Assembly (NCBI RefSeq): GCF_006345805.1
Contig: NC_043001.1
Coordinates: forward strand, 91,016,001 to 91,080,000
DNA: 64,000 nucleotides
Direction of reading: 5' to 3'
Source of the DNA: Octopus sinensis
Taxonomy: Eukaryota
Translations under genes and position numbers: made by a program
Shown: positions 440 to 26,560 of the stretch, in pieces
How the letters are laid out: every line of letters starts with the position of its first letter
Numbering within the stretch: position 1 is the first letter of the stretch
The notes under the pieces: model-generated
Databases searched by the model: none
The model's input: the letters and a program-made list of their open reading frames with translations, nothing else
Told to the model about the DNA's origin: nothing

Positions 440-3260
440 TTAAGGCTTTCGAAGGCAAAGTTTAGTCATAAAGTCACATTAAACGATCAACTAAGAGCAC
501 TACTACAGTGCTACATAAATAATATACAGGAAACGCCTGAAACTCCTGGTACACTTTCACCAGCGTTGCATCCGGGTTGTTTTGTGCATTCAGTGGTTCC
601 CATACATTCATATCATTGAAACGTTGAAGAAAGCTGGTTTAGCCAGTGTAGAAATCATATATACACTGTCACAGATTAAGTATGAACCGGACATCTAGTG
701 AGAGAAAAAGTAAAACGCACTGTCAAGCAACTGCTTTACGAACAAAAACCTAAGGATTGTCATTGTGCTTCATGTACTGCATTAAATCAATACATGCGAA
801 GACGAGACGAGCTTTCAGAAAGAGGGAAGTAATAGAGACAACATGTACTCTATTATAACTGTTTCATGCTGAGCGTTTGTTTTTCACAAGCCGGTCTTTT
901 AAATCATAAGAAAGATCACGCTGGGTCACTAAGTGCAGGGTTTTATTATGATCAAGGTTCATAAGTTAAGTCTTTTGTATGACTGGAATGTAGAAACGTA
1001 TGCAATAGTAACTCAGGTCTCTCCTGCCATTCTAAAATTCACAAGGACGGTACAGACCCTACATTATCCACAGGCTTATGTGCATATATAAGTCACACAT
1101 ATAGACTCTCAACAACTCTTTTTCTTTGCATGCGCCTCTGTTCTCACTTTTCAGCGGTAGACTTTTAACAAAGGACACTATTTCCAGCTAAGTTCGTCGC
1201 TTTTGCTTACTCATTTTTTACTGTTCGTTCCTTTTGTTGCACCACACAGCGTTCATACACACATACATGGATGCTTGAATCCAGTTACACACACGCACCT
1301 CAATATTCTTTTCTGCTCTAGGCACAAGGCCCGAAATTTTTAGGGAGGGGGTGCCAGTCGATTAGATCGACCCCAGTACGCAACTGGTACTTAATTCATT
1401 GACCCCGAAAGGATGAAAGGCAAAGTCGACCTCGGCGGAAACGTGCATCTCAATATTGTACCTCAACTGCCTTGTTTTCATCGCGTCTGTGCCTGCTCAG
1501 CTCTTTTCAAGACTCAATGCACGTTGGATGTCTCATGCTCTCTACGCCCTTGTTCTAGACACAACTCGCCTCTGTAAGACTTCAGGTTAGTCACGTATAC
1601 ATGGAAAGAGTTGTCTGTCTCTCGCAACACGCCCGTATGCCACACTGTTGTTCTTGGTAATCTCAGCAAATGCCCACGACAACAGAGCCAGACAGATTTC
1701 GCTTCTGTTCTATTCGAAAGGCATTTCACACAGAATGCAATCCTGCAAAAAAATTTTTGATGATATCATGGATTGAAAGTGCACACACTTACTCGCCTTA
1801 GCTTATTCCACAGCTGCAGGACTTTCTCTCGCATTCATGTATACACCCTTGCACGCACATTCACTCACTACCCCAGTCACGCAACGACTGGAACATTCAG
1901 CACTCATGCGCATGCTCACTCAGCTGCCTCAGTCTTGCAACGACTGCACACTACGCACGCAAAGCGACAAAACTATTCGAACCCGCTCGAATAGATACCT
2001 GTGTCGTATGCACAATTTTTGTCAGCCTTGCATCACATTCACTTACAACAAAATACCTTTTTCGAGATCGTTCGTTTCTTCTTCTTGTAAACTCTCTAGC
2101 GGGGAAGTAGTGCGGGACCACGCTTGGCCCTGCCTGAGATTCGAAACTGAATCTGTAAATTCTCCCTAACCATACGACCTATTGTTCTGTCAGGGATAAA
2201 TGCTGATATATGTATTTTCCACTTCACTCTTAACCTTTTCTATGCCATGAAAAGTTGAAATAGATGAGTGACGTACATTAATTTAATCGTTGTCAGAATC
2301 GTATATCCATCTTTCTAGCTAGTCTACATAGTTATAAATACCAGCATATTGGCTGAAAATTCTGAAAATTATCAAACTTTGAACACCTGTAATAGTTTAG
2401 CAAAAATTTTCTGGAATAATTGAATAACAAATCCGGATTCAGTGTCAAAAATTACATCTATATTATACATTAAAATTCTTTTTAAAAATTTTGACAGGCA
2501 ATACCGATAACCACAAAAATCCTTACAATAAATTAATAGATAAAAAGCTAATAGCTTTTAAATTTTGCAAAAATTGGGTTTCGGGGTCGATAAAATAAGT
2601 ACCAGTTTAGCGTTGGGGCCGATTTAAGCATATTGTGGTAATCAAATTGCACAAAAAATATTGAGCTATTGAATTTCACAACCGAATCTTTTCTAACAGA
2701 AAATTTCCGATATCAAGTGGTGAAGAGACAGAAGTTTGGCTTGACTACCACGTGGTATTTGTTATCACTTGTGCACTAAGAGTTCAAATCCCTTTAAGGT
2801 CAACACTACATTTTATGATTTCGGGGTGGATAAAAAGTAACAATACAGGGCAGCAGAACTATTAGGGTGGTCGGACAAGATGCTTAGCAGTATCAGATAC
2901 GGTTCGTCGCTTTTCGACAGCAACGCTTGCGACAACACTAGTATCAAGCTGTGGAGGCGCAAGCCGGCAGCTTTTTCCTTGTATAAGCTCTGGTGATGTA
3001 GAGAGGGGAGTATATGTATGAGCAACTGTCAGTCTTCCTTAAGCGTTTCGTTACTAAACACCAACTTGATAATGGCAAAGTTATTTTTCTAAATTCTTTA
3101 TTATTTTCAAAATTAACTGTAGTGACATTTCAATAAAAATATGGTAACAAAGAGCTAAAAAAAAATCGTGCTTAGGCCTGCGCATGAGAAAATTCATAGC
3201 CAACCTTGACTTCTGGTAGCTTTTGAAATTTCTGGAAAAAAAGAAAAGGTTATATAATAG

Positions 3261-3762
3261 ATATATATATAAAACTGTAGTTGTGTAAGTGTCTGTCTCC
3301 TTCGATTTAGATTCCTAACTACTCCCACATTTTGCGGTGCAGTTTAACCAAATTCGGGTATCTTATAGTCGTGATTCATATCGAGCCCGTCTGAGTATTA
3401 GCGCGCGTCTACGATGAGTCTACGATTTTAAAAATAATTTAACATCATTTTTTATTCCATTTTAATGCATAATTTTTCGTGTGTCGATGGCGGCGGAGTT
3501 GGCGTCCATGGTCACACCTGCACCTGTTTGCTTCACCCCCTTCTTCCCTCCCTCGTGAAGCTGTGGGGAAGGAAATCAACGTCGTAAAGCGTTGTCAAGG
3601 AGACCAGCGTTCTTTTAGAAGAACGACTTCATGGCTTGAAGACACCAAAACAGAAATGGCTAAGAAAGCCCGAATTGGCATCTATAAGGGAAGTAACTCT
3701 CTAAAAATGCTTATATAGTTATTTCCCTTACAAACCCGAGCAACGCCGGGCGATACTGCTAG
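3261..3762 (+). mobile_element. Non-autonomous Helitron-like element
   Basis: 3' subterminal GC hairpin cccg...cggg (3735-3750) followed by CTAG|T. The 5' end lies in a TA run and is approximate. Confidence 0.6.
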
Positions 3763-11085: not shown

Positions 11086-11305
11086 TTTACGTTCTGAGTT
11101 CCAATTCCGCCGAGATCGACTTTATCTTTTCGGGGTCGATGAAATAAGTACCAGTCGAGTACTTGGGTCGATGTAATTGACTAGCCACTTCCCACAAAAA
11201 TTTCAAGCCTAGTGCTTGTAATGGGAATCCTCCTCCTCGTCGTCGTCGTCATCGTCGTTGTCGTCATCATCGTCATCATCATCATCATCATCATCATCAT
11301 TATTA

Positions 11306-11843
11306 AGTGAGAAAGCAGCACACGTCATCAAAGTGACGCCGGGGTACAAATATTCGAATCCCAGTATACCTATCATGACTACCCGTCTTATAAGGGTACC
11401 CCAGATACATGCATCACAACCATAATGTATGCGACATGGTGATCTCATATAAAGATAAAGGGCGCGTGACCTTGCAGGTGGGGGCCTAGTTAAAATTTTC
11501 TTCAGGCCGAGTAGCCCATCCCGCTCAAAAGGTCCCTGAATAAGGGTTACCTAAGGATGATGAACAAAACACCCATGTTTCCAGGATTAAATTATTCATA
11601 CCCGAAAGAATTCCTCTCAAACATGCCTATGATGCTCCCTCACAACTCCTGCTCATGATCAGAAATGCACGTATCGACAGTCACTAAGGGACATGCTCAA
11701 CAGGTTAAGGCCAAAACCTGTGGTATGGAGCTAAATATTTGCTGTAGCCCATCTTCTACACTAAGACAAAGGATGCACATAATACTTCTAATCAGTTTAG
11801 ACCAGAGGCCATGAGAGCCAGTGCCTAGTATTGCATCAGGGCA

Positions 11844-11844
<1 letters not shown>
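11306..11844. mobile_element. Short non-coding element embedded in trinucleotide repeats (copy A)
   Basis: Homologous to 11986-12374. Ends in gcatcagggcat against (TTA)n, with (TCA)n on the left. Confidence 0.6.
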
Positions 11845-11885
<41 letters not shown>

Positions 11886-11920
11886 CATTATTATCATTAT
11901 TATTATTATTATTATTATTA

Positions 11921-11981
<61 letters not shown>

Positions 11982-11985
11982 CATT
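11845..11985. repeat. (TTA)n microsatellite with TCA variants
   Basis: Read directly. Another (TTA)n lies at 12375-12426. Confidence 0.95.
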
Positions 11986-12372
11986 GAGTGAGAGAGAAGT
12001 ACATGCCATCAAAGTGACACTGGGATACAAATATACGAAGCCCAGTATACCCATCATAACTACCTGTCTAATAAGAGTACACCAGATACATGCATCACAA
12101 CCATATGAGCGCGACATGGTGATCTCATATCAAGATAAAAAACGCATGACCTTGCAGGTTGGGCCCAGTTAGAATTTTCTTCAGGTCGAGTAGCAACTGA
12201 TAAGCAAATCTGTGGTACTGAGCAGAATATTTGTTATAGCCCATCTATTATATTATACCAAGACAAAACAATGTACATGATAGCACTTCCAATAAGCTAA
12301 GATCAGAAGCCATGAGAGCCGCTGCCTGGTACTGCATCAGGGCATAGCCACTGCCTGGTACTGCAACAGGGC

Positions 12373-12374: not shown

Positions 12375-12427
<53 letters not shown>

Positions 12428-12428
<1 letters not shown>

Positions 12429-13252
12429 TTTCTTTCTTCAAATATTCTTCCATTTCGCGCTGAGAGTGTTTTCCGTACACCTAGGGCAGAGGAGCTCATT
12501 GTATGCATTCCCAAGTACTTATAGCCCGTCTCTTCTATCTGCTTCATAACCTCCCCCGACAGTATCGTTAGCCCGTCCATACATTTGATTTTGCCTCTCT
12601 TCAAGACTTACCACACCACACTTTCTCAGTCCGAACTCCATTCTGATATCAGCACTGAAGGTATACACCGTATCAACGAGGGAACTGACTTGGGCTTCAT
12701 CTTTACCATAAAGTTTGAGGTCATCCATGAATAATAAATGGCTGACTTTTTGTTGGCGGCTTTTGAATAAATACCCAGCTTTTGCTTTCCTCAGAATCAG
12801 TGTTAGTGGTATTAAGCACAGTACAAAGGTCAGTGGGGACAGGCAGTCCCCTCGGAAGATGCCCCTCCCAATTTCTACTGTCCCTAAACTTCTTCCGTAA
12901 GCTGTCAGGGCCGTCCTCCAATTCACCATACTTTTTCCAAGTAATTGCTCAATATTCGATGCAATACCAAACAGGTTCATACATTCCATAATCCAAGAAT
13001 GTGGGATCATATCGTACGCCTTATGATAGTCGATCCATGACATGGCTAAATTAGTTTTCCTCCTCTTGCAGTCTCTAAGTATAGTTTTGTCTATCAGGCG
13101 CTGACTCTTGGTACCTCTGCACTTACGCTTGCAACCCTTCTGCTCATGTGGAAGGACTCCATTTTTTACCAGATGTTCGTACATTGAATCTGCGAGTATT
13201 CCAGTCAATAACTTCCACATAAGTGGCAAACAGGATATCGGCCTGTAATTGT
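12428..13252 (-). pseudogene. R4/Dong-clade reverse transcriptase fragment
   Basis: 236-aa ORF with [43 protein letters not shown] and [11 protein letters not shown]. Confidence 0.9.
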
Positions 13253-13348: not shown

Positions 13349-13419
<71 letters not shown>

Positions 13420-14073
13420 AGCGGTGGCGGCGAGGTTGTCTGACAAAATGCTTAGTAGCACTTCTTTCAGCTTTGCGTTCTGAGTACAAATTATTTATTT
13501 TTTTAAATTAGGTACAAGGCCAACAATTTTAAGGGGAAGGCGATAGACACCATCGACTCCAGTACTTGAATAGTATTTTACGTAATCGATCCCGTAAGGA
13601 CGAAAGGCAAAATTGACCTCTGTGGGACTTGAACTCAAAACGCAAAAACCCAGTGAAGTCAGCCTTACTTTTTATTCTTCTGGGGTTCATCAAATAGTTT
13701 ACTATTTCAGTTAACTCTCTAAGAAAGACATTATGTTTTCTTGTTAAGGTAGCCTGTGAGAAAGCAAAATTATATGTCTGGCTCAGAAATGCAACTAAGT
13801 ATTGTATTAGGTACGGGTTGTCCTCATGAGACCTTCTAGGTCATCATTATAGACATTCAATGGGCAATTTTTTTTATCATGTTAATTAAAATATCAATGC
13901 CTTCTTTTAATTTTAATTTTAATATTTCGTAAAATATCATTTCAGACTGCCGAACCGTCCTCAGCGCTAACGAACGCCAGTATTTTCTTAATCATCAATC
14001 AGCTCTGAAACTGAAAGGTTGGATCATTTTTTTCTCTTAATCTTCATCAACACGAAACGGGCGAACAATTAAA

Positions 14074-15681
14074 ATGAAACTGTTAATCTCAAAACAACCA
14101 CTTGCTCTACTTATTGTTATCACATTATTAAGTATATCGAACGGTCAATATGAATGCAATTCATTGAACTGCGTGCTTCCGAACTGCAATTGTAAAAGCT
14201 CAAATATACCACATGGGTTGTCGAAAGATGTCGTACCACAGCTTGTCATGATTACATTTGATGATGCAGTCACAACAGATAACTATGAGACCTACAATCA
14301 TTTAATGACCGGGATTACGAATCCGAACGGCTGTCCAATCAGTGCTACTTTCTTTGTCTCACACGAATACACTGATTACAAGACAGTACAGCAACTCCAT
14401 TCACAGGGACACGAAATTGCCAGTCATTCGATTTCACATCGTTTTCCACCATCTTGGTGGCAAACAGCTAATTATACTGATTGGTATTCGGAAATACAGG
14501 GTCAGCGTGAAATGCTTTCTACTTGGGCTCATATCGATAAATCCGAAATCAAAGGTATGCGTGCCCCATTTCTACAGCCTGGGGGAAACTGGCAATTTCA
14601 GATTATTTCAGATTTAAAACGCGATGGTTTTAAATATGATGCTTCTTTAGTCTCTTACATTCATAAAATTGATCCATACGCTCCTCCAATATGGCCGTAT
14701 ACCCTAGACTTTCCTTCAGTTGATGATTGTGGGGTAAAACCGTGTCCTGATTGGACATTTCGTGGTTTATGGGAAATTCCATTGGTCGAATACGAAGACA
14801 AAGACGGTACTCTTTGCGCTATGTTAGATGAATGTGATGCAGCTAGATCAGAAGAAGAGCTTTATAATGTCATTATGAAGAACTTCGAGAACCATTACAA
14901 TACCAACAGAGCTCCTTTCGGAATTTATATGCATTCACCGTGGTTAAAAAATCCTTCTAATTTTAATGTGGTTCGGCGATTTATGCAAGACATAGCTACT
15001 CGGGGTGATGTTTGGTTTGTGTCACAATCAAAAGTACTTGATTGGATACAAAGTCCTAAGACACTTCAATCGATGGACACGTTTTCATCATTTAATTGTT
15101 GGTTACACCGCAGCCCCTGGGTGTGTACAGACGACCAGTCTATTACATGTGTCTATGATACTTCTGGATTTCTAGTCTGGCCGAGAAGAATTTCAAAAAG
15201 AAATGCTGTTTATCCGAAAACTAATATTTCTACTGTCTTAGATCAGGAGTATTTCAATCGGCAACAAGCTCGAGCAACACGTAAAATGAAGCTTTGGAGT
15301 CAGTCGACCGGATTAAATTTTCCAGGTAGGACTACAGAAGCCCTTTATAATGACGCAACTCCATCTTACGACTATGGAGAAGCATATGGTGTATATTACA
15401 ACGGTCAAAGTGAACCAGGCTTCATACCATATCCAAAACCAAATGAAGATGGAAATCATCAAGAAGGTTATTATTCTGAAGAATCTGGAACACCAGAACG
15501 AGAAGCAGGTGACGCCAAATTAACATCAAATCTTCTTGCGTCTATTTTAGGTCCAAAAAACAAGGCGAGAATCGGTGTTAGTCGTAAAAAGAGACAGTCC
15601 AACACATTCCATGAACTTCACATATGTTCGGAATATTGTCCCTTTCGATACCCTTGGCTTAACAATATCGATGGCCAATAA
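14074..15681 (+). CDS. Secreted chitin/polysaccharide deacetylase (CE4, NodB fold; catalytic-domain-only CDA type), 535 aa, CDS without introns
   Basis: Uninterrupted ORF with a hydrophobic signal peptide (MKLLISKQPLALLIVITLLSISNG). CE4 motifs are intact: MITFDD, HEIASHSISH, GMRAPF, WPYTLD, LWEIP, RAPFGIYMH. It ends in the animal-CDA tail C-x3-CP-x2-YPW. No CBM14 or LDLa module is visible. Confidence 0.93.
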   Translation: MKLLISKQPLALLIVITLLSISNGQYECNSLNCVLPNCNCKSSNIPHGLSKDVVPQLVMITFDDAVTTDNYETYNHLMTGITNPNGCPISATFFVSHEYTDYKTVQQLHSQGHEIASHSISHRFPPSWWQTANYTDWYSEIQGQREMLSTWAHIDKSEIKGMRAPFLQPGGNWQFQIISDLKRDGFKYDASLVSYIHKIDPYAPPIWPYTLDFPSVDDCGVKPCPDWTFRGLWEIPLVEYEDKDGTLCAMLDECDAARSEEELYNVIMKNFENHYNTNRAPFGIYMHSPWLKNPSNFNVVRRFMQDIATRGDVWFVSQSKVLDWIQSPKTLQSMDTFSSFNCWLHRSPWVCTDDQSITCVYDTSGFLVWPRRISKRNAVYPKTNISTVLDQEYFNRQQARATRKMKLWSQSTGLNFPGRTTEALYNDATPSYDYGEAYGVYYNGQSEPGFIPYPKPNEDGNHQEGYYSEESGTPEREAGDAKLTSNLLASILGPKNKARIGVSRKKRQSNTFHELHICSEYCPFRYPWLNNIDGQ

Positions 15682-15916
15682 GATAGATATACCAAACACG
15701 TACAAAAATGTATTATTTTCCTTTTTTCCGAATTTTGTTTAGAGTGTTTTAGGTTTTGATTTTGAAATAACTTTTTATGGCTTAGTCAGTGGAGCCAAGT
15801 CAGTGCTTAGCACCCTCTTCAGGGCCTCAGTCACTGGTAGAAGTGGAGACCTAGCCTAAATACTTACCGTAGAGTACACACCAATAAAGGTGCCCAAAGA
15901 CCAGTTATTACATTAA

Positions 15917-16918: not shown

Positions 16919-17334
16919 TAATATATATATATATATGTATGTTTGTGTATGTATATATATATATATATATACACATACATATATGTATGTATTTTTATAT
17001 ATGTATAATCTACAGCAGCTCATCTCACAACATATGTGTGCGTGCGTGCGTGCGTGCGCGCGTGTGTGTGTGTATCACAATCGCAATTGTGCGTCCTTGG
17101 TAAGCGACTAGTCATTATCAACATAAATATTGTTAGCTATTGAGAAAACACACACACACACACACACACACGCGCGCGCACACGCACACACACACACACA
17201 CACCACACACACACACACATACACGTCTAATTCCAAATTATGGGAGTGGAAAAAGTAAAACGTAAGCTACATATGTTTCTTAGCTAACTGTAGCTCATTA
17301 CATAAATCTTGCGCACTTCATGTATACGGGTGTC

Positions 17335-17399: not shown

Positions 17400-18281
17400 C
17401 TATTCGTTCCTTTGCACCATATGAGCTCAACTCTCCTCCCCTCTTCATCTAACCTCCCCCCTCCCACACTTACTTCCTCTCTTCACTCTCACCCACCTCT
17501 CCTCTCCTCTCTTGTTCTAACACCTACTTCCTCTCTTCACTCCTACCCACATTCTCCCTTCCACCCTCTCCCTTCATCGTCACCACCTCCATCGTTACCT
17601 ACACATTCCAACCCCACCATCTCTATACATCCTATCCCACCCCACCCTATCCCCCATATTCCACTCTCACATACCCCACCTTACCACACCCTGACACCCC
17701 ACTCCCACATAATACCCCACCCTCACCTCTCCCACACCCCAACAGCACCACACCACACACCACCGCACCACACCACACACCACCACACCACACCACATCA
17801 CACCACACACCACCACACCACACACCACCACACCACCATACCACACCACATCACATCACACCATCCCGCACACACTAACATTGATCACTTCCCAGCACCC
17901 ACACCGTCATCCACACACCTACACCTGCACACACGCACACGTCAAGGTCTCCAACCCTATCCACAAGCACATACACGCTCTCACACACACACGCATGCGC
18001 ACCGTCGTTTTGTTGATCACCACTACTTTATTATCTCTCCTTCCTAGCTCTCCTGTCTGACCACCTCTGTCCGGCATTCGCCATGATTAATCGCTTGCCA
18101 CTAAACCTTTTTTAAAAAAATTTCTCTCCGTTTATTTCTGTGTTCCTTTCTGCTGAAAAGCGTAGGCTCGAAACGTAAAAGACTTTCTCACTTCCCGAGC
18201 GTTAAACTAATACATCTGTTTGTTGTTTACAACACCTGTCTTCGTCTTTTGTTTTGTTTGTTGTTTTGTAAATTTCAACTA
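17400..18281 (+). mobile_element. Penelope-like remnant, family 2
   Basis: Pyrimidine/CCACA-rich body followed by a hammerhead-like motif at 18146-18181. Microsatellite flanks. Confidence 0.5.
18146..18181 (+). ncRNA. Putative degenerate minimal hammerhead ribozyme
   Basis: cttt-CTGCTGA-a-aagc-gtag-gctc-GAAAC-GTA-aaag, with an ACGT palindromic helix III. Confidence 0.45.
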
Positions 18282-18615: not shown

Positions 18616-18699
18616 AGCACACATACAAATGTATGTGTATCTGTTTTGTGTGTATGAGTGTGTATGTGGGGGAGTGTGTCTGTATGTGTGTGTTTGTGT

Positions 18700-18824
<125 letters not shown>

Positions 18825-25189: not shown

Positions 25190-26560
25190 GATAGGAATTT
25201 CACCCGAGTCTACGCTACAATACCATACGACATTCGAAGGCCGTCTGCACTGATCTCAGGCCTCTACCACCTTCATTTCTTCTTAGGTAGAACCTGTCAA
25301 CATCACTGTTTCTGTGGAAGTTCCCAGTTGTTGTTAGGATTTTGTGTGTTTTGATATCTATGGAGTGGATTTCCTCCACAGACCAATTAAGTATCCTAAA
25401 TGTTGGGATCAGCACTGGTACTGCTAATTCATTGTGGGATATTGTTTCGTTGTAAGAGGAGAGTTCCGACTGCCATAGTTTCCTAAGTCTGGTGTAATAT
25501 TCTCGGGTCATTTTATCTTTATTCACAGTGCCTTCATATGATACAGTTTCGTCTATGCCTAGGTACTTGTAACATTGTGTGGAATGGGGGAGATAAAGAG
25601 ACCGTTGATGCACAGGTTTTGGGTTTCGGGGACTGACTTTTCTTGTTCTATACCTAAATATGAACATTTCTTCTGGCCAAATTCAATGCCTATATCAGCT
25701 GGAAATGTTGTTATTAATTCTAGTTGTATTTTGACATGGCTAACACTTTTAGCACAAATCTCTTCATAGAAATTATGAGTTACATTGATATATCTAGCAG
25801 CTGAAGATCCTAGCATGTAACCATTTGTTTTCTGCAGTAGGAACGATATTGGATTTAGTGCCAAAATGAAAAGGAGTACAGAATGATTCTCTCCTTGGAA
25901 TATTCCCTTTGAAATGATTATACTATCAGAAACAATTATTCTGTTCTCAGTTGTAAGAGTAGGAATTGCTGTCCATGTCTTCGTGAGTCTCTCTATAGCA
26001 GCAATTAAGCTAGTTGGCACTTTTGCCAGATGTTGGCACTTCAACGGCCATGAATGAGGGATGGAGTCGACTGCCTTCCTATAGTCAAGCCATACTGTCA
26101 CAAAGTTTCTACGTTATTTTCTTACTTCAGACAGTACAGCTTTGTTTATTAAAAGTTATTCAGCACATTCCCACACCCACTTCTTTCCACCAGCCAGTTC
26201 ATCAGTCACAATATTCTTCGACTCACAATGGCCCTGGAGGAATTGGTTGAGGCAACTTGTGTACGGTTTGTACATAATGGGTCTGCAAAGGGCCTGCAGT
26301 TTCCTGCCATCTCGGTGATTTCATTTTTGGCAACAAGATTTGTCCTTGCTGTAGCAAGCCAATTTGGTATATTAGGCTGACCTTCCATAATCCTTTTGAA
26401 CATAAATATCAATTGGTTTCAATAAAATATCAGCTTCTTGTACCAATATCCAACTATTAGGTCTCGTCCAGGTGCTTTTCCATTCTGCAGTTTGCCTACT
26501 GTTTTAGCAAAGGTTTTTGCATCAATTTTGTATGTTTTACTGTAGTACTGGTACAGTATT
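25190..26560 (-). pseudogene. Decayed R4/Dong-clade RT fragment
   Basis: WLDYRKAVDSIPHSW, KGIFQGE, DIGIEFGQKKC and YKYLGI...REYYTRLRKLWQSEL across frameshifts. Confidence 0.85.

What the first reader, a model, noticed from the sequence alone, without database searches (positions are those of the whole stretch)
15184..15681. Chitin deacetylase with a C-peptide-like insert bounded by convertase sites, splitting the conserved Cys tail
Seen: after the catalytic domain and ...NC...VC...TCVYD comes RRISKR (15184-15201). A ~130-aa Cys-free Tyr/Gly/Glu/Pro-rich segment follows (YDYGEAYGVYYNG, EGYYSEESG), then RKKR (15583-15594), then QSNTFHELHICSEYCPFRYPWLNNIDGQ. Established: animal CDAs end in a compact Cys-rich tail with C-x-x-(x)-CP-x-x-YPW close after these cysteines. 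RKKR is a canonical furin site and KR is a PC1/PC2 site. Inference: the insert may be excised so the tail stays disulfide-tethered in a two-chain enzyme, releasing a Tyr-rich peptide that could be cross-linked into chitinous matrix (beak, radula, sucker cuticle) or act as an activation switch.
Basis: partly seen in the sequence, partly recalled or inferred. Interest (0 to 1): 0.72.

Follow-up and report, generated by a model that had tools for sequence, protein, structure and literature searches.

The report
Octopus chitin deacetylase with excisable linker
An octopus gene for a secreted chitin-modifying enzyme carries a floppy 127-residue insert flanked by two conserved protease-cutting signals, so the enzyme is probably cut into two chains as proinsulin is, which has not been described for this enzyme family and is so far only predicted from sequence.

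Summary
Window 14074-15681 (+) is a single-exon 535-aa ORF of Octopus sinensis. It encodes a secreted CE4/NodB chitin deacetylase (Pfam PF01522; Bombyx CDA8, PDB 5Z34, E 2e-74; predicted fold TM 0.82).

In about 90 animal CDAs, 32-42 residues separate the end of the catalytic domain from the C-x-x-(x)-CP-x-x-YPW tail. Here the distance is 182 residues. The extra piece is a Cys-free 127-aa insert between RRISKR (aa 371-376) and RKKR (aa 504-507).

The insert defines a small exclusive clade: Octopus, cuttlefish-like and other decapodiform cephalopods, and two unidentified lineages. Insert length (25-178 aa), charge and composition differ completely between lineages. The only invariant residues between L367 and H513 are R376, K506 and R507. 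Site 1 lies 16-17 residues after Cys-3 and site 2 exactly 11 before Cys-4 in all five lineages. AlphaFold gives pLDDT below 50 for the insert and above 80 for the tail.

Excision by proprotein convertases into a heavy chain and a 28-aa light chain is the best reading, but it is unproven. The disulfide tether is only indirectly supported. Tyr-richness is specific to Octopus, so a conserved matrix cross-linking role is not supported. This is a new variant of a known enzyme family, of moderate interest.

The parts
14074..15681 (+). Complete single-exon CDS (535 aa plus stop) of a secreted CE4/NodB chitin deacetylase
   Evidence: ORF listed. Pfam PF01522 at 1.2e-09. PDB 5z34 at E 2.3e-74. Identical protein annotated in the O. 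sinensis and O. vulgaris assemblies. Whole-gene dN/dS 0.10 against another Octopus species.
14074..14145 (+). Signal peptide, aa 1-24 (MKLLISKQPLALLIVITLLSISNG, predicted cleavage before Q25)
   Evidence: Read directly from the sequence: basic n-region, hydrophobic core, and S-x-G at -3/-1. AF2 models it as a helix at 2-22 detached from the fold. The cleavage position is inferred.
14146..15093 (+). Catalytic NodB-homology domain, aa 25-340. It carries the CE4 motifs TFDD (61-64), HSISH (118-122), RAPF (163-166) and H287, plus nine conserved Cys.
   Evidence: Aligned residue by residue with BmCDA8 and BmCDA1. The motif residues are invariant or nearly invariant in 38 CDAs. AF2 pLDDT mostly above 90, and Foldseek 5z34_A TM 0.82 with rmsd 1.5 A. 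dN/dS 0.05.
15094..15183 (+). First half of the animal-CDA C-terminal loops, aa 341-370, holding C342, C351, C359 and predicted strands 357-361 and 366-369
   Evidence: C351 and C359 are invariant and C342 nearly invariant. Strands from AF2, pLDDT 71-88. dN/dS 0.06 for aa 341-376.
15184..15201 (+). Basic site 1, RRISKR (aa 371-376); proposed cut after R376
   Evidence: R376 is invariant in 13 clade sequences and P2 is always K or R. P1 lies 17 residues after Cys-3 in four lineages and 16 in the fifth. It sits at the start of the pLDDT<50 segment 374-390. It is canonical R-x-[KR]-R only in P0006 (RGRR) and P0007 (RRRR). In coleoids it is a KR site with I at P4.
15202..15582 (+). Lineage-specific insert (connecting peptide), aa 377-503: 127 aa, no Cys, one N-x-S sequon (N384), predicted disordered
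   Evidence: Composition. pLDDT below 50 at 374-390 and 415-507, with a weak helix at 386-412. No Pfam family. No homologue as a stand-alone protein. dN/dS 0.22 within Octopus and 0.16 within decapodiforms, so it is translated and constrained.
15583..15594 (+). Basic site 2, RKKR (aa 504-507), a canonical R-x-[KR]-R convertase motif; proposed cut after R507
   Evidence: K506 and R507 are invariant and R504 nearly invariant. The five lineages read RKKR, RWKR, RWKR, RDKR and RSKR. P1 is exactly 11 residues before Cys-4 in all five. It is the only R-x-[KR]-R in the protein.
15595..15678 (+). Tail / proposed 28-aa light chain, aa 508-535 (QSNTFHELHICSEYCPFRYPWLNNIDGQ), with C518, C522 and the CP-x-x-YPW motif
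   Evidence: Aligns with the BmCDA8 and BmCDA1 C-termini (domain 2). C518, C522, P523, P527 and W528 are invariant in 38 CDAs. AF2 places a strand at 513-517 with pLDDT 81-86. dN/dS 0.05. The light chain is 28 aa in the three coleoid lineages printed; the P0006 and P0007 strings print as 29.
15098..15241 (+). Position of the 144-nt in-frame GT..AG 'intron' used by the RefSeq model of the O. bimaculoides orthologue (487 aa). It would delete C342-D390, meaning three conserved Cys and site 1.
   Evidence: Comparison of P0001 (535 aa) with P0002 (487 aa) and the window sequence. It is probably an annotation artefact or a minor isoform. This was not testable here because no RNA-seq is available.

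Best explanation
The gene encodes a secreted, probably active CE4 chitin deacetylase. It is of the catalytic-domain-only type and resembles insect group V CDAs such as Bombyx CDA8.

In an ancestor of a small clade (coleoid cephalopods plus two unidentified sister lineages), the tight turn of the C-terminal beta-hairpin between Cys-3 and Cys-4 was replaced. In its place is a disordered, Cys-free linker bounded by two proprotein-convertase sites.

The most likely mechanism runs as follows. In the secretory pathway a furin/PC-type convertase cuts after R507 (RKKR, canonical) and after R376 (RRISKR, a KR site with basic P5/P6). Carboxypeptidase then trims the basic residues. The result is a heavy chain of about 350 aa (Q25 to about S374) and a 28-aa light chain (Q508-Q535, possibly with a pyroglutamate N-terminus). 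The light chain stays docked as the second hairpin strand, probably through disulfides among C351, C359, C518 and C522.

The 127-aa connecting peptide is released. This hairpin lines one end of the substrate cleft in BmCDA8, so excision plausibly opens or reshapes the cleft, which would be an activation or maturation step.

Shown here: the fold, the catalytic motifs, the insert, its predicted disorder, the clade restriction, and the conservation of both sites. Inferred: cleavage, chain association, and the effect on activity.
For: Enzyme identity rests on Pfam PF01522, BmCDA8 and BmCDA1 at E 2e-74 and 3e-69 with the TFDD and HSxxH motifs aligned, and Foldseek 5z34_A at TM 0.82 and rmsd 1.5 A.

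The insert is exceptional. The gap from catalytic domain to tail is 32-42 aa in about 90 CDAs but 81-233 aa in this clade. In a library of 1.84e9 representative proteins, only this clade has a long gap bounded at both ends by positionally conserved basic sites. The 14 insert-bearing sequences form an exclusive clade with SH-like support 0.79.

The sites are conserved while the insert is not. Between L367 and H513 the only invariant columns are R376, K506 and R507. Site 2 is R-x-K-R in every lineage. P1 of site 1 lies at Cys3+17 (16 in one lineage) and P1 of site 2 at Cys4-11 in all five. Meanwhile the C3-C4 distance ranges from 57 to 209 aa, and insert pI ranges from 5.4 to 11.3.

The sites are predicted to be accessible. 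pLDDT is below 50 at 374-390 and 415-507, while the tail is at 81-86 with a strand at 513-517. The distant member P0007 gives the same picture.

The tail is under strong constraint, with dN/dS 0.05 and 0.02, so it is retained for function and not discarded.

Across 359 CDA domains, C351 and C359 co-occur with the tail cysteines. Tail-less CDAs keep C342 and the nine upstream Cys but lose C351 and C359.

The BmCDA8 cleft residue Tyr361 maps to the position aligned with query E514, seven residues after site 2. The residue offset of 18 was derived from the D63/H117/H121 numbering in PMC6463723 against the alignment.

Golgi convertases that cut after R-x-K/R-R and K-R are established knowledge for molluscs and for animals generally.
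Against: There is no proteomic, transcript or biochemical evidence of cleavage. All Logan contigs used here look genomic.

Site 1 in coleoids has Ile at P4. It is therefore not a canonical furin site, and cutting may be partial or tissue-specific.

The insert is under purifying selection within orders, with dN/dS 0.22 and 0.16. It is therefore more than a passive spacer and could function while still attached.

The disulfide connectivity of the tail is unresolved. No coordinates were available, the structure paper does not mention disulfides, and natural Cys-loss variants were uninformative.

The clade support value of 0.79 is moderate.
Confidence: 0.6

Rival explanations
1. The protein is cut once only. 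The canonical site 2 (R-x-K-R) is cleaved and the weaker site 1 is not. This gives a two-chain enzyme whose heavy chain keeps the insert as a disordered C-terminal extension, and no free connecting peptide is released.
For: Site 2 fits R-x-[KR]-R in all five lineages. Site 1 in Octopus and decapodiforms has I at P4 and H at P6 in decapods. The insert is under purifying selection, which fits a role while attached.
Against: R376 is invariant with K or R at P2, and its position is fixed at Cys3+16 or +17. In P0006 and P0007 site 1 is itself canonical, RGRR and KRRRR. KR sites are ordinary PC1/3 and PC2 substrates (established knowledge).
Confidence: 0.15
2. The insert is a permanent disordered surface loop and is not cleaved. 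The flanking basic residues would then serve another role, such as binding acidic matrix components or sulfated glycans, or electrostatic steering of chitin or chitosan.
For: There is no direct evidence of cleavage. Insert dN/dS is 0.16-0.22. Decapod inserts are strongly basic overall.
Against: Only the P1 and P2 residues are invariant, while overall charge flips from pI 5.4 to 11.3. A charge-patch function would not need [KR]R at exactly Cys3+17 and Cys4-11. Decapod inserts also have six internal dibasic sites, which is typical of processed precursors.
Confidence: 0.17
3. This is the second half of the reader's idea. The main purpose would be to release a Tyr-rich peptide that is oxidatively cross-linked into chitinous structures such as beak, radula or sucker lining.
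For: The Octopus insert has 11 Tyr (8.7%) and 9.4% Gly, in motifs such as YDYGEAYGVYYNG and EGYYSEESG.
Against: Tyr content is 2.8-3.1% in decapodiform inserts, 2.9% in P0007 and 0% in P0006, so this cannot be the conserved function. No similarity to any protein family or stand-alone protein was found. The tissue of expression is unknown.
Confidence: 0.05
4. The 'insert' is not protein. It would be an unrecognised intron or an annotation artefact, or the gene would be a dead retrocopy.
For: The coding region has no introns, which is unusual for a cephalopod gene. The RefSeq model of the O. bimaculoides orthologue does place a 144-nt intron nearby.
Against: The frame stays open through inserts of 25-178 aa in five lineages. 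Insert dN/dS is 0.22 and 0.16, with all three sub-segments at 0.16-0.31. Catalytic-domain dN/dS is 0.05-0.07. The RefSeq intron removes the conserved Cys cluster and not the insert, which would leave an odd number of Cys.
Confidence: 0.02

Closest known systems
Insect group V chitin deacetylases, e.g. Bombyx mori CDA8 (PDB 5Z34); also the catalytic domain of BmCDA1 (5ZNS/5ZNT)
   Same: Both have a signal peptide followed by a CE4 NodB catalytic domain alone, with no chitin-binding or LDLa domain. The catalytic motifs are the same, the N-terminal Cys knot is conserved, and the C-terminal loops carry five Cys and C-x-x-(x)-CP-x-x-YPW. Sequence identity is 38%, TM 0.82 and rmsd 1.5 A.
   Different: In BmCDA8 the two halves of the C-terminal hairpin are joined by a short turn, and the distance from catalytic end to tail is about 33 aa. 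Here 127 disordered residues bounded by RRISKR and RKKR are interposed. The searched literature reports no convertase processing for insect CDAs.
Proinsulin / insulin-like peptide precursors (C-peptide architecture)
   Same: Works like: a secretory precursor in which an internal connecting peptide is flanked by dibasic convertase sites. The connecting peptide varies freely in length and sequence between lineages while the flanking chains and their cysteines are conserved. The product is a two-chain protein (established knowledge; pattern seen here).
   Different: There is no homology. The 'A/B chains' here are a 350-aa enzyme and a 28-aa strand. Inter-chain disulfides are not demonstrated. Cleavage has not been observed.
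Coagulation factor VIII B domain (a large, poorly conserved internal region removed at R-x-x-R sites to give a heavy/light-chain protein)
   Same: Works like: a dispensable-looking, fast-evolving, disordered internal segment of a secreted protein is excised at basic sites, and the two conserved halves stay associated (recalled from established knowledge, not tested here).
   Different: The fold is unrelated. In factor VIII the chains associate through a metal ion, further cuts are made by thrombin, and the B domain is heavily glycosylated, whereas this insert has one sequon.
Other cephalopod and mollusc CDAs seen here (O. sinensis / O. vulgaris 'CDA7-like' P0055, P0056, P0260; Argonauta P0110; tandem two-domain bivalve and gastropod CDAs P0010-P0014, P0022)
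   Same: They share the CE4 catalytic domain, at about 42% identity for the cephalopod CDA7-like paralogues and 29-36% for the tandem bivalve/gastropod CDAs, and the first post-catalytic Cys.
   Different: They lack the C-x-x-CP-x-x-YPW tail altogether. They end just after Cys-1, carry a hydrophobic anchor, or have a second catalytic domain. In this sample the insert-bearing gene is the only octopod CDA with the tail.

Membership tests
CE4 / NodB-homology chitin deacetylase (animal type) | NodB homology (polysaccharide deacetylase) domain | tested here: met
   Pfam PF01522 at E 1.2e-09 and 38.6 bits, above the 23.1 cut-off. phmmer to BmCDA8 at 2.3e-74.
CE4 / NodB-homology chitin deacetylase (animal type) | Catalytic and metal-binding residues: TFDD (Asp base plus Asp ligand), H-S-x-x-H, R-x-P-F/Y, and the motif-5 His | tested here: met
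   T61-F62-D63-D64, H118 and H122, R163 and P165, and H287 are present. They align with BmCDA8 D63/H117/H121 (PMC6463723) and are invariant or nearly invariant in 38 CDAs.
CE4 / NodB-homology chitin deacetylase (animal type) | (beta/alpha)7 barrel fold with the insect-type loop insertion and C-terminal loops | tested here: met
   AF2 model with pLDDT above 90 over the barrel. Foldseek 5z34_A at E 1.4e-36, TM 0.82 normalised to the target, rmsd 1.5 A over 325 columns.
CE4 / NodB-homology chitin deacetylase (animal type) | Compact five-Cys C-terminal region ending in C-x-x-(x)-CP-x-x-YPW, 32-42 aa after the barrel | tested here: not met
   All five Cys and the motif are present (C342, C351, C359, C518, C522; CSEYCPFRYPW). 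The region is not compact, however: the distance is 182 aa instead of 32-42. This is the deviation that defines the variant. It does not argue against family membership.
CE4 / NodB-homology chitin deacetylase (animal type) | De-N-acetylation of chitin or chito-oligomers | not testable with these tools
   This needs an enzyme assay. BmCDA1, which has all the motifs, is inactive alone (PMC6463723), so the motifs do not guarantee activity.
Proprotein-convertase-processed precursor with an excised connecting peptide | Entry into the secretory pathway (signal peptide) | tested here: met
   The N-terminal 24 residues have n-, h- and c-regions (sequence). All clade members have an equivalent hydrophobic N-terminus. 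No dedicated signal-peptide predictor was available.
Proprotein-convertase-processed precursor with an excised connecting peptide | Basic cleavage motifs, (K/R)-R or R-x-(K/R)-R, at both ends of the excised segment | tested here: met
   RRISKR at 371-376 and RKKR at 504-507. RKKR is the only R-x-[KR]-R in the protein.
Proprotein-convertase-processed precursor with an excised connecting peptide | Sites conserved across orthologues while the intervening peptide diverges | tested here: met
   R376, K506 and R507 are the only invariant columns between L367 and H513. The sites have fixed offsets from Cys-3 and Cys-4 in five lineages. Inserts run from 25 to 178 aa with pI 5.4 to 11.3.
Proprotein-convertase-processed precursor with an excised connecting peptide | Sites lie in exposed, flexible structure | tested here: met
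   By prediction only. pLDDT is below 50 at 374-390 and 415-507 in the query and at 371-412 in P0007.
Proprotein-convertase-processed precursor with an excised connecting peptide | The two product chains are held together by inter-chain disulfides | tested here: inconclusive
   C351 and C359 co-occur with the tail cysteines across 359 domains. The strand topology 357-361 / 513-517 is compatible with C359-C518 pairing. Local pairs (C351-C359, C518-C522) are not excluded. No coordinates or published disulfide map were available.
Proprotein-convertase-processed precursor with an excised connecting peptide | Cleavage actually occurs in vivo | not testable with these tools
   This requires proteomics or expression experiments. 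No relevant report was found in the searched literature.

The most novel reading that the evidence does not exclude
This clade would be the first zymogen-type carbohydrate esterase family 4 enzyme. The disordered connecting peptide would occlude the end of the chitin-binding cleft until convertases excise it, and the released peptide would have acquired lineage-specific functions of its own. In decapodiform cephalopods the insert has pI about 11, is Arg/Pro/Asn-rich and has six internal dibasic sites. It could be diced into cationic, antimicrobial-like peptides. This links to the report that a chitin deacetylase is the third most abundant transcript in cuttlefish haemocytes (PMC7551771), although the paralogue in that study is not identified. 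In Octopus the insert is acidic and Tyr/Gly-rich, with an S-x-E cluster, which would suit a role in matrix or mineral association.
Probability: 0.15. Interest if true: 0.75.

Novelty: new variant of a known kind. Interest (0 to 1): 0.5.

Why it matters
Animal chitin deacetylases shape cuticles, tracheal tubes, peritrophic matrices and mollusc shells. How their activity is controlled is still poorly understood: Bombyx CDA1 is inactive until a partner protein is added (PMC6463723).

A CDA lineage whose C-terminal, cleft-forming hairpin is split by an excisable linker would give a concrete proteolytic control point that can be tested. It would be the first example in the CE4 family of a C-peptide-type, two-chain maturation.

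It would also give cephalopod biology a marker enzyme for chitin and chitosan processing in beak, radula, gladius or cuttlebone, stylets and sucker linings, and possibly in haemocytes. On the practical side, the RefSeq model of the O. bimaculoides orthologue appears to delete three structural cysteines and should be checked against RNA-seq.

Tried and rejected
1. Intron or artefact reading of the insert. Rejected on open frames in five lineages and dN/dS of 0.16-0.31 in every sub-segment.

2. Insert as a known domain or a captured gene. Pfam finds nothing at E<=1 over the whole protein or E<=0.01 for the insert alone. A search of 5.8 billion proteins with the insert alone gave no hit.

3. A wider distribution of the insert. 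P0005 (Strigamia, 'gap 373') and the long mollusc proteins P0010-P0014 and P0022 turned out to be tandem two-domain CDAs, not insert-bearers. P0130, P0252 and P0185 have moderately long gaps (74-139 aa). They fall outside the 14-member insert clade where placed, and they lack the conserved pair of flanking sites.

4. Disulfide map. The BmCDA structure paper never mentions disulfides. A literature search for 'BmCDA1' plus 'disulfide bond' returned nothing. Natural variants lacking single Cys were uninformative: two lack Cys-1 and one lacks Cys-4. The structure tool returns no coordinates.

5. Mapping BmCDA8 Phe347 onto the query, by searching the PDB with the 52-aa Cys-cluster piece, gave only chance hits. 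Only Tyr361 could be mapped.

6. Transcript evidence. The Logan contigs for Octopus and the cuttlefish-like species are collinear with genomic flanks and read through a TTTCAG acceptor just before the ATG. They look genomic, not mRNA.

7. Taxon of P0006 and P0007. A second homologue search found no named close relative. The runs are SRR29346471 and SRR26493809.

8. Literature on cephalopod CDAs or on convertase processing of CDAs. Nothing specific was found.
Full report
**What is there.** The window is 100% identical over 7.6 kb to Octopus sinensis assembly GCA_006345805.1 (CM016863.1) and 98% identical to O. vulgaris OX597818.1. The finding lies in the only long ORF of the region, 14074..15681 on the + strand. 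This ORF is 535 aa, is uninterrupted, and starts with a typical signal peptide. Pfam recognises one domain, polysaccharide deacetylase PF01522. The best solved relatives are Bombyx mori CDA8 (5Z34, E 2.3e-74, query 28-335) and CDA1 (5ZNS, 3.1e-69). Each gives a second short alignment of the extreme C-terminus, query 514-535 against ...YMTICNTCPRNYPWVGNPLGQ.

The catalytic signature is intact: TFDD 61-64, H118-S-I-S-H122, R163-A-P-F and H287. It aligns with the BmCDA8 metal triad D63/H117/H121 (PMC6463723). An AlphaFold2 model built on a 38-sequence alignment has pLDDT above 90 over the barrel. It superposes on 5Z34 with TM 0.82 (normalised to the target) and rmsd 1.5 A. The protein is therefore a secreted CE4 chitin deacetylase of the catalytic-domain-only type.

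**The observation.** RRISKR is aa 371-376 (15184-15201), RKKR is aa 504-507 (15583-15594), and the tail QSNTFHELHICSEYCPFRYPWLNNIDGQ is aa 508-535. The segment between the sites is 127 aa, Cys-free, and carries one N-glycosylation sequon. Tyr and Gly are about twice as frequent as in the catalytic domain. Pro is not enriched.

The premise about animal CDAs also holds. Among about 90 homologues with the C-x-x-(x)-CP-x-x-YPW motif, the distance from the end of the barrel to the motif is 32-42 aa. In the query it is 182 aa. The post-barrel segment normally holds exactly five Cys, in 199 of 212 cases. The query has the same five (C342, C351, C359, C518, C522), with the extra sequence lying between Cys-3 and Cys-4.

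**Distribution.** The closest relatives also carry an insert at the same place:
- O. bimaculoides (96% identity) and three Logan-assembled Octopus sequences (94%).
- Four cuttlefish-like sequences (P0003, P0125-P0127). Their N-terminal half matches an Acanthosepion pharaonis fragment.
- A decapodiform genomic contig (P0004).
- Two divergent proteins known only from SRA assemblies (P0006, P0007/P0128).

A profile search of 1.84 billion representative proteins found no further members. Other long 'gaps' were tandem two-domain enzymes or isolated cases without the conserved pair of flanking sites. On a tree of 358 catalytic domains, the 14 insert-bearing sequences form an exclusive clade with SH-like support 0.79. 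The other octopod CDAs seen here lack the tail altogether.

**The key comparative result.** Inserts range from 25 to 178 aa and differ greatly between lineages. In Octopus they are acidic (pI 5.4) with 8-9% Tyr. In decapodiforms they are strongly basic (pI about 11), rich in Arg, Pro and Asn, with about 3% Tyr and six internal dibasic sites. All of them are Cys-free.

Between L367 and H513 of the 13-sequence alignment, the only invariant columns are R376, K506 and R507. These are the P1 residue of site 1 and the P2 and P1 residues of site 2. R504 (P4) and Q508-S509 (P1'-P2') are at least 90% conserved. Site 2 reads RKKR, RWKR, RWKR, RDKR and RSKR in the five lineages. Site 1 reads RRISKR, HSISKR, HRISKR, QRGRR and KRRRR.

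The P1 of site 1 lies 17 residues after Cys-3 (16 in P0007). The P1 of site 2 lies exactly 11 residues before Cys-4 in all five lineages, although the Cys-3 to Cys-4 distance varies from 57 to 209 aa. Shuffling each segment reproduces both placements in only 0.15-1.5% of trials per lineage. In the three coleoid lineages printed, the fragment after site 2 is 28 aa.

**Structure.** AF2 predicts strands at 357-361 and 366-369 before the insert and at 513-517 after it. pLDDT is 71-88 before the insert and 81-86 after it, but below 50 for 374-390 and 415-507. A weak helix at 386-412 has pLDDT of about 57-61. The distant member P0007 gives the same picture: strands at 350-354 and 359-365, low confidence at 371-412, and a tail strand at 446-450. 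The insert therefore replaces the turn of the C-terminal hairpin, and both basic sites sit at the edges of a flexible segment.

The Bombyx paper states that the C-terminal loops form one end of the substrate cleft of BmCDA8 through Phe347 and Tyr361 (PMC6463723). The metal-ligand numbering fixes an offset of 18 between the residue numbers and the PDB chain numbers. With that offset, Tyr361 is the Y of YMTIC, which aligns with query E514, seven residues after site 2. The insert thus emerges next to the cleft. I could not map Phe347.

**Is the insert translated and does it matter?** Against another Octopus species (89% nucleotide identity), dN/dS is 0.05 for the catalytic domain, 0.06 for the Cys cluster, 0.22 for the insert and 0.05 for the tail. 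The three insert thirds give 0.16-0.31. Between two decapodiform genes (dS about 0.9) the values are 0.07, 0.11, 0.16 and 0.02. The insert is therefore coding and moderately constrained within orders, yet almost unalignable between orders. One conserved island is an acidic S-x-E cluster, SEESGTPERE in Octopus against SEESGSVESE in decapods. This excludes the intron or pseudogene reading. It also means the insert is more than inert spacer.

**The disulfide tether.** Across 359 CDA domains, 209 with a tail have all twelve upstream Cys. About 56 tail-less domains keep C342 and the nine upstream Cys but lack C351 and C359. C351, C359, C518 and C522 therefore behave as one evolutionary unit, which points to two disulfides among them. 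The strand topology makes a C359-C518 pair plausible. Local pairing (C351-C359 and C518-C522) is not excluded, however. Natural single-Cys variants were uninformative, no coordinates were available, and the literature searched is silent on the point. The tether is an inference.

**Best explanation (confidence about 0.6).** The protein is a secreted precursor. Furin/PC-type convertases cut after R507 and R376, and carboxypeptidase trims the basic residues. A heavy chain of about 350 aa and a 28-aa light chain remain associated as the two strands of the hairpin, probably through disulfides, and the connecting peptide is released. The near-invariant Gln at the new N-terminus is a candidate for pyroglutamate formation. 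Because of where the insert sits, excision plausibly matures or activates the substrate cleft.

The fold, motifs, insert, predicted disorder and site conservation are shown here. Cleavage, chain association and any effect on activity are inferred.

**Rivals.** These are:
- Cleavage at the canonical site 2 only (0.15).
- A permanently retained loop whose basic residues do something else (0.17).
- A conserved Tyr cross-linking role for the released peptide (0.05). This is contradicted by the decapod, P0006 and P0007 compositions.
- An annotation artefact (0.02).

**Comparison with what is known.** By homology this is a member of the animal CE4 chitin deacetylases. Every defining feature that could be tested is met except the compactness of the C-terminal region, and that exception is the variant itself. 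By mechanism it most resembles proinsulin-type precursors: a connecting peptide that varies freely between conserved dibasic sites and conserved Cys-bearing chains. More loosely, it resembles removal of the factor VIII B domain. These are analogies, not membership. Six full-text searches found no description of convertase processing of a CDA or of this cephalopod subfamily. I therefore rate it a new variant of a known kind, of moderate interest (0.5). The comparative signal is clean and unusual for this enzyme family. It is a sequence-based prediction, and its biological pay-off depends on experiments.

**Side observations.**
- The coding region is a single exon in Octopus and in the decapodiform genomic contig.
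- The RefSeq model of the O. bimaculoides orthologue (487 aa) splices out the equivalent of window 15098-15241. That removes C342-D390, with three conserved Cys and site 1, and is unlikely to be the main product.
- A chitin deacetylase is the third most abundant transcript in Sepia officinalis haemocytes (PMC7551771). That paralogue could not be identified here.

Noticed in passing
window 14074-15681; L004 6001-7800; L005 1663-3270: The whole coding region of this CDA is one exon in Octopus and in a decapodiform genomic contig. Octopus paralogues, by contrast, are annotated with multiple isoforms. The insert-bearing clade may descend from a retrocopy. Cuttlefish-like contigs have a TTTCAG acceptor 1 nt before the ATG, and the window has a tttcag at 13940-13945, which suggests a 5'-UTR intron only.
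   Followed up: partly
window 15098-15241: The RefSeq model of the O. bimaculoides orthologue (P0002, 487 aa, 'chitin deacetylase 7') uses a 144-nt in-frame GT..AG intron with a weak donor. It deletes C342-D390, meaning three conserved cysteines and basic site 1, and leaves an odd number of Cys. This is probably a mis-annotation or a minor isoform.
   Followed up: partly
window 15484-15513 (aa 471-480, SEESGTPERE): This acidic S-x-E cluster (SEESGSVESE in decapodiforms) is one of the few insert motifs conserved between Octopus and decapodiforms. It resembles secretory-pathway kinase (S-x-E) phosphorylation sites. Upstream of site 2 there is also a weakly conserved amphipathic stretch: NLLASIL in the window, NLLRQSL in P0007.
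   Followed up: no
window 15595-15597 (Q508): The residue that would become the light-chain N-terminus is Gln in four of the five lineages, followed by a near-invariant Ser. This makes it a candidate for pyroglutamate capping after cleavage.
   Followed up: no
literature: PMC7551771, Table S1 (transcript TR33375 c0_g1_i1): A 'chitin deacetylase' is the third most abundant transcript (about 16,000 TPM) in Sepia officinalis haemocytes and is unchanged by Vibrio challenge. Which paralogue it is was not determined. The decapodiform inserts of this clade have pI about 11 and multiple dibasic sites.
   Followed up: partly
L007 (SRR29346471) 663-1964; L008 (SRR26493809) 2300-3709: Two divergent clade members (P0006 with a 25-aa insert, P0007 with a 68-aa insert) come from unidentified organisms. 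No named close relative exists in the 5.8-billion-protein collection. On the tree they are sister to the coleoid sequences.
   Followed up: partly
window 12519-13229 (-), 25215-26101 (-): Reverse-transcriptase fragments (Pfam RVT_1, E 2e-16 and 1e-05) from non-LTR-type retroelements lie 0.8 kb upstream and 9.5 kb downstream of the gene. The downstream one is split across two overlapping frames, so it is degraded.
   Followed up: partly
window 11844-11985, 12375-12427, 13358-13419, 17148-17224, 17732-17863, 18647-18822; also 11275-11515 vs 11956-12194: The gene is surrounded by dense microsatellites: (TAT)47, (TTA)18, (ACT)21, (AC)39, (CCACA)27 and (TG)88. They generate the long low-complexity pseudo-ORFs in the ORF list. 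There is also a pair of ~240-bp direct repeats at 83% identity upstream of the gene.
   Followed up: no
window 15883-15888: An AATAAA lies about 200 nt after the stop codon and is a plausible polyadenylation signal. Similarity to the other Octopus species continues to at least 16060.
   Followed up: no
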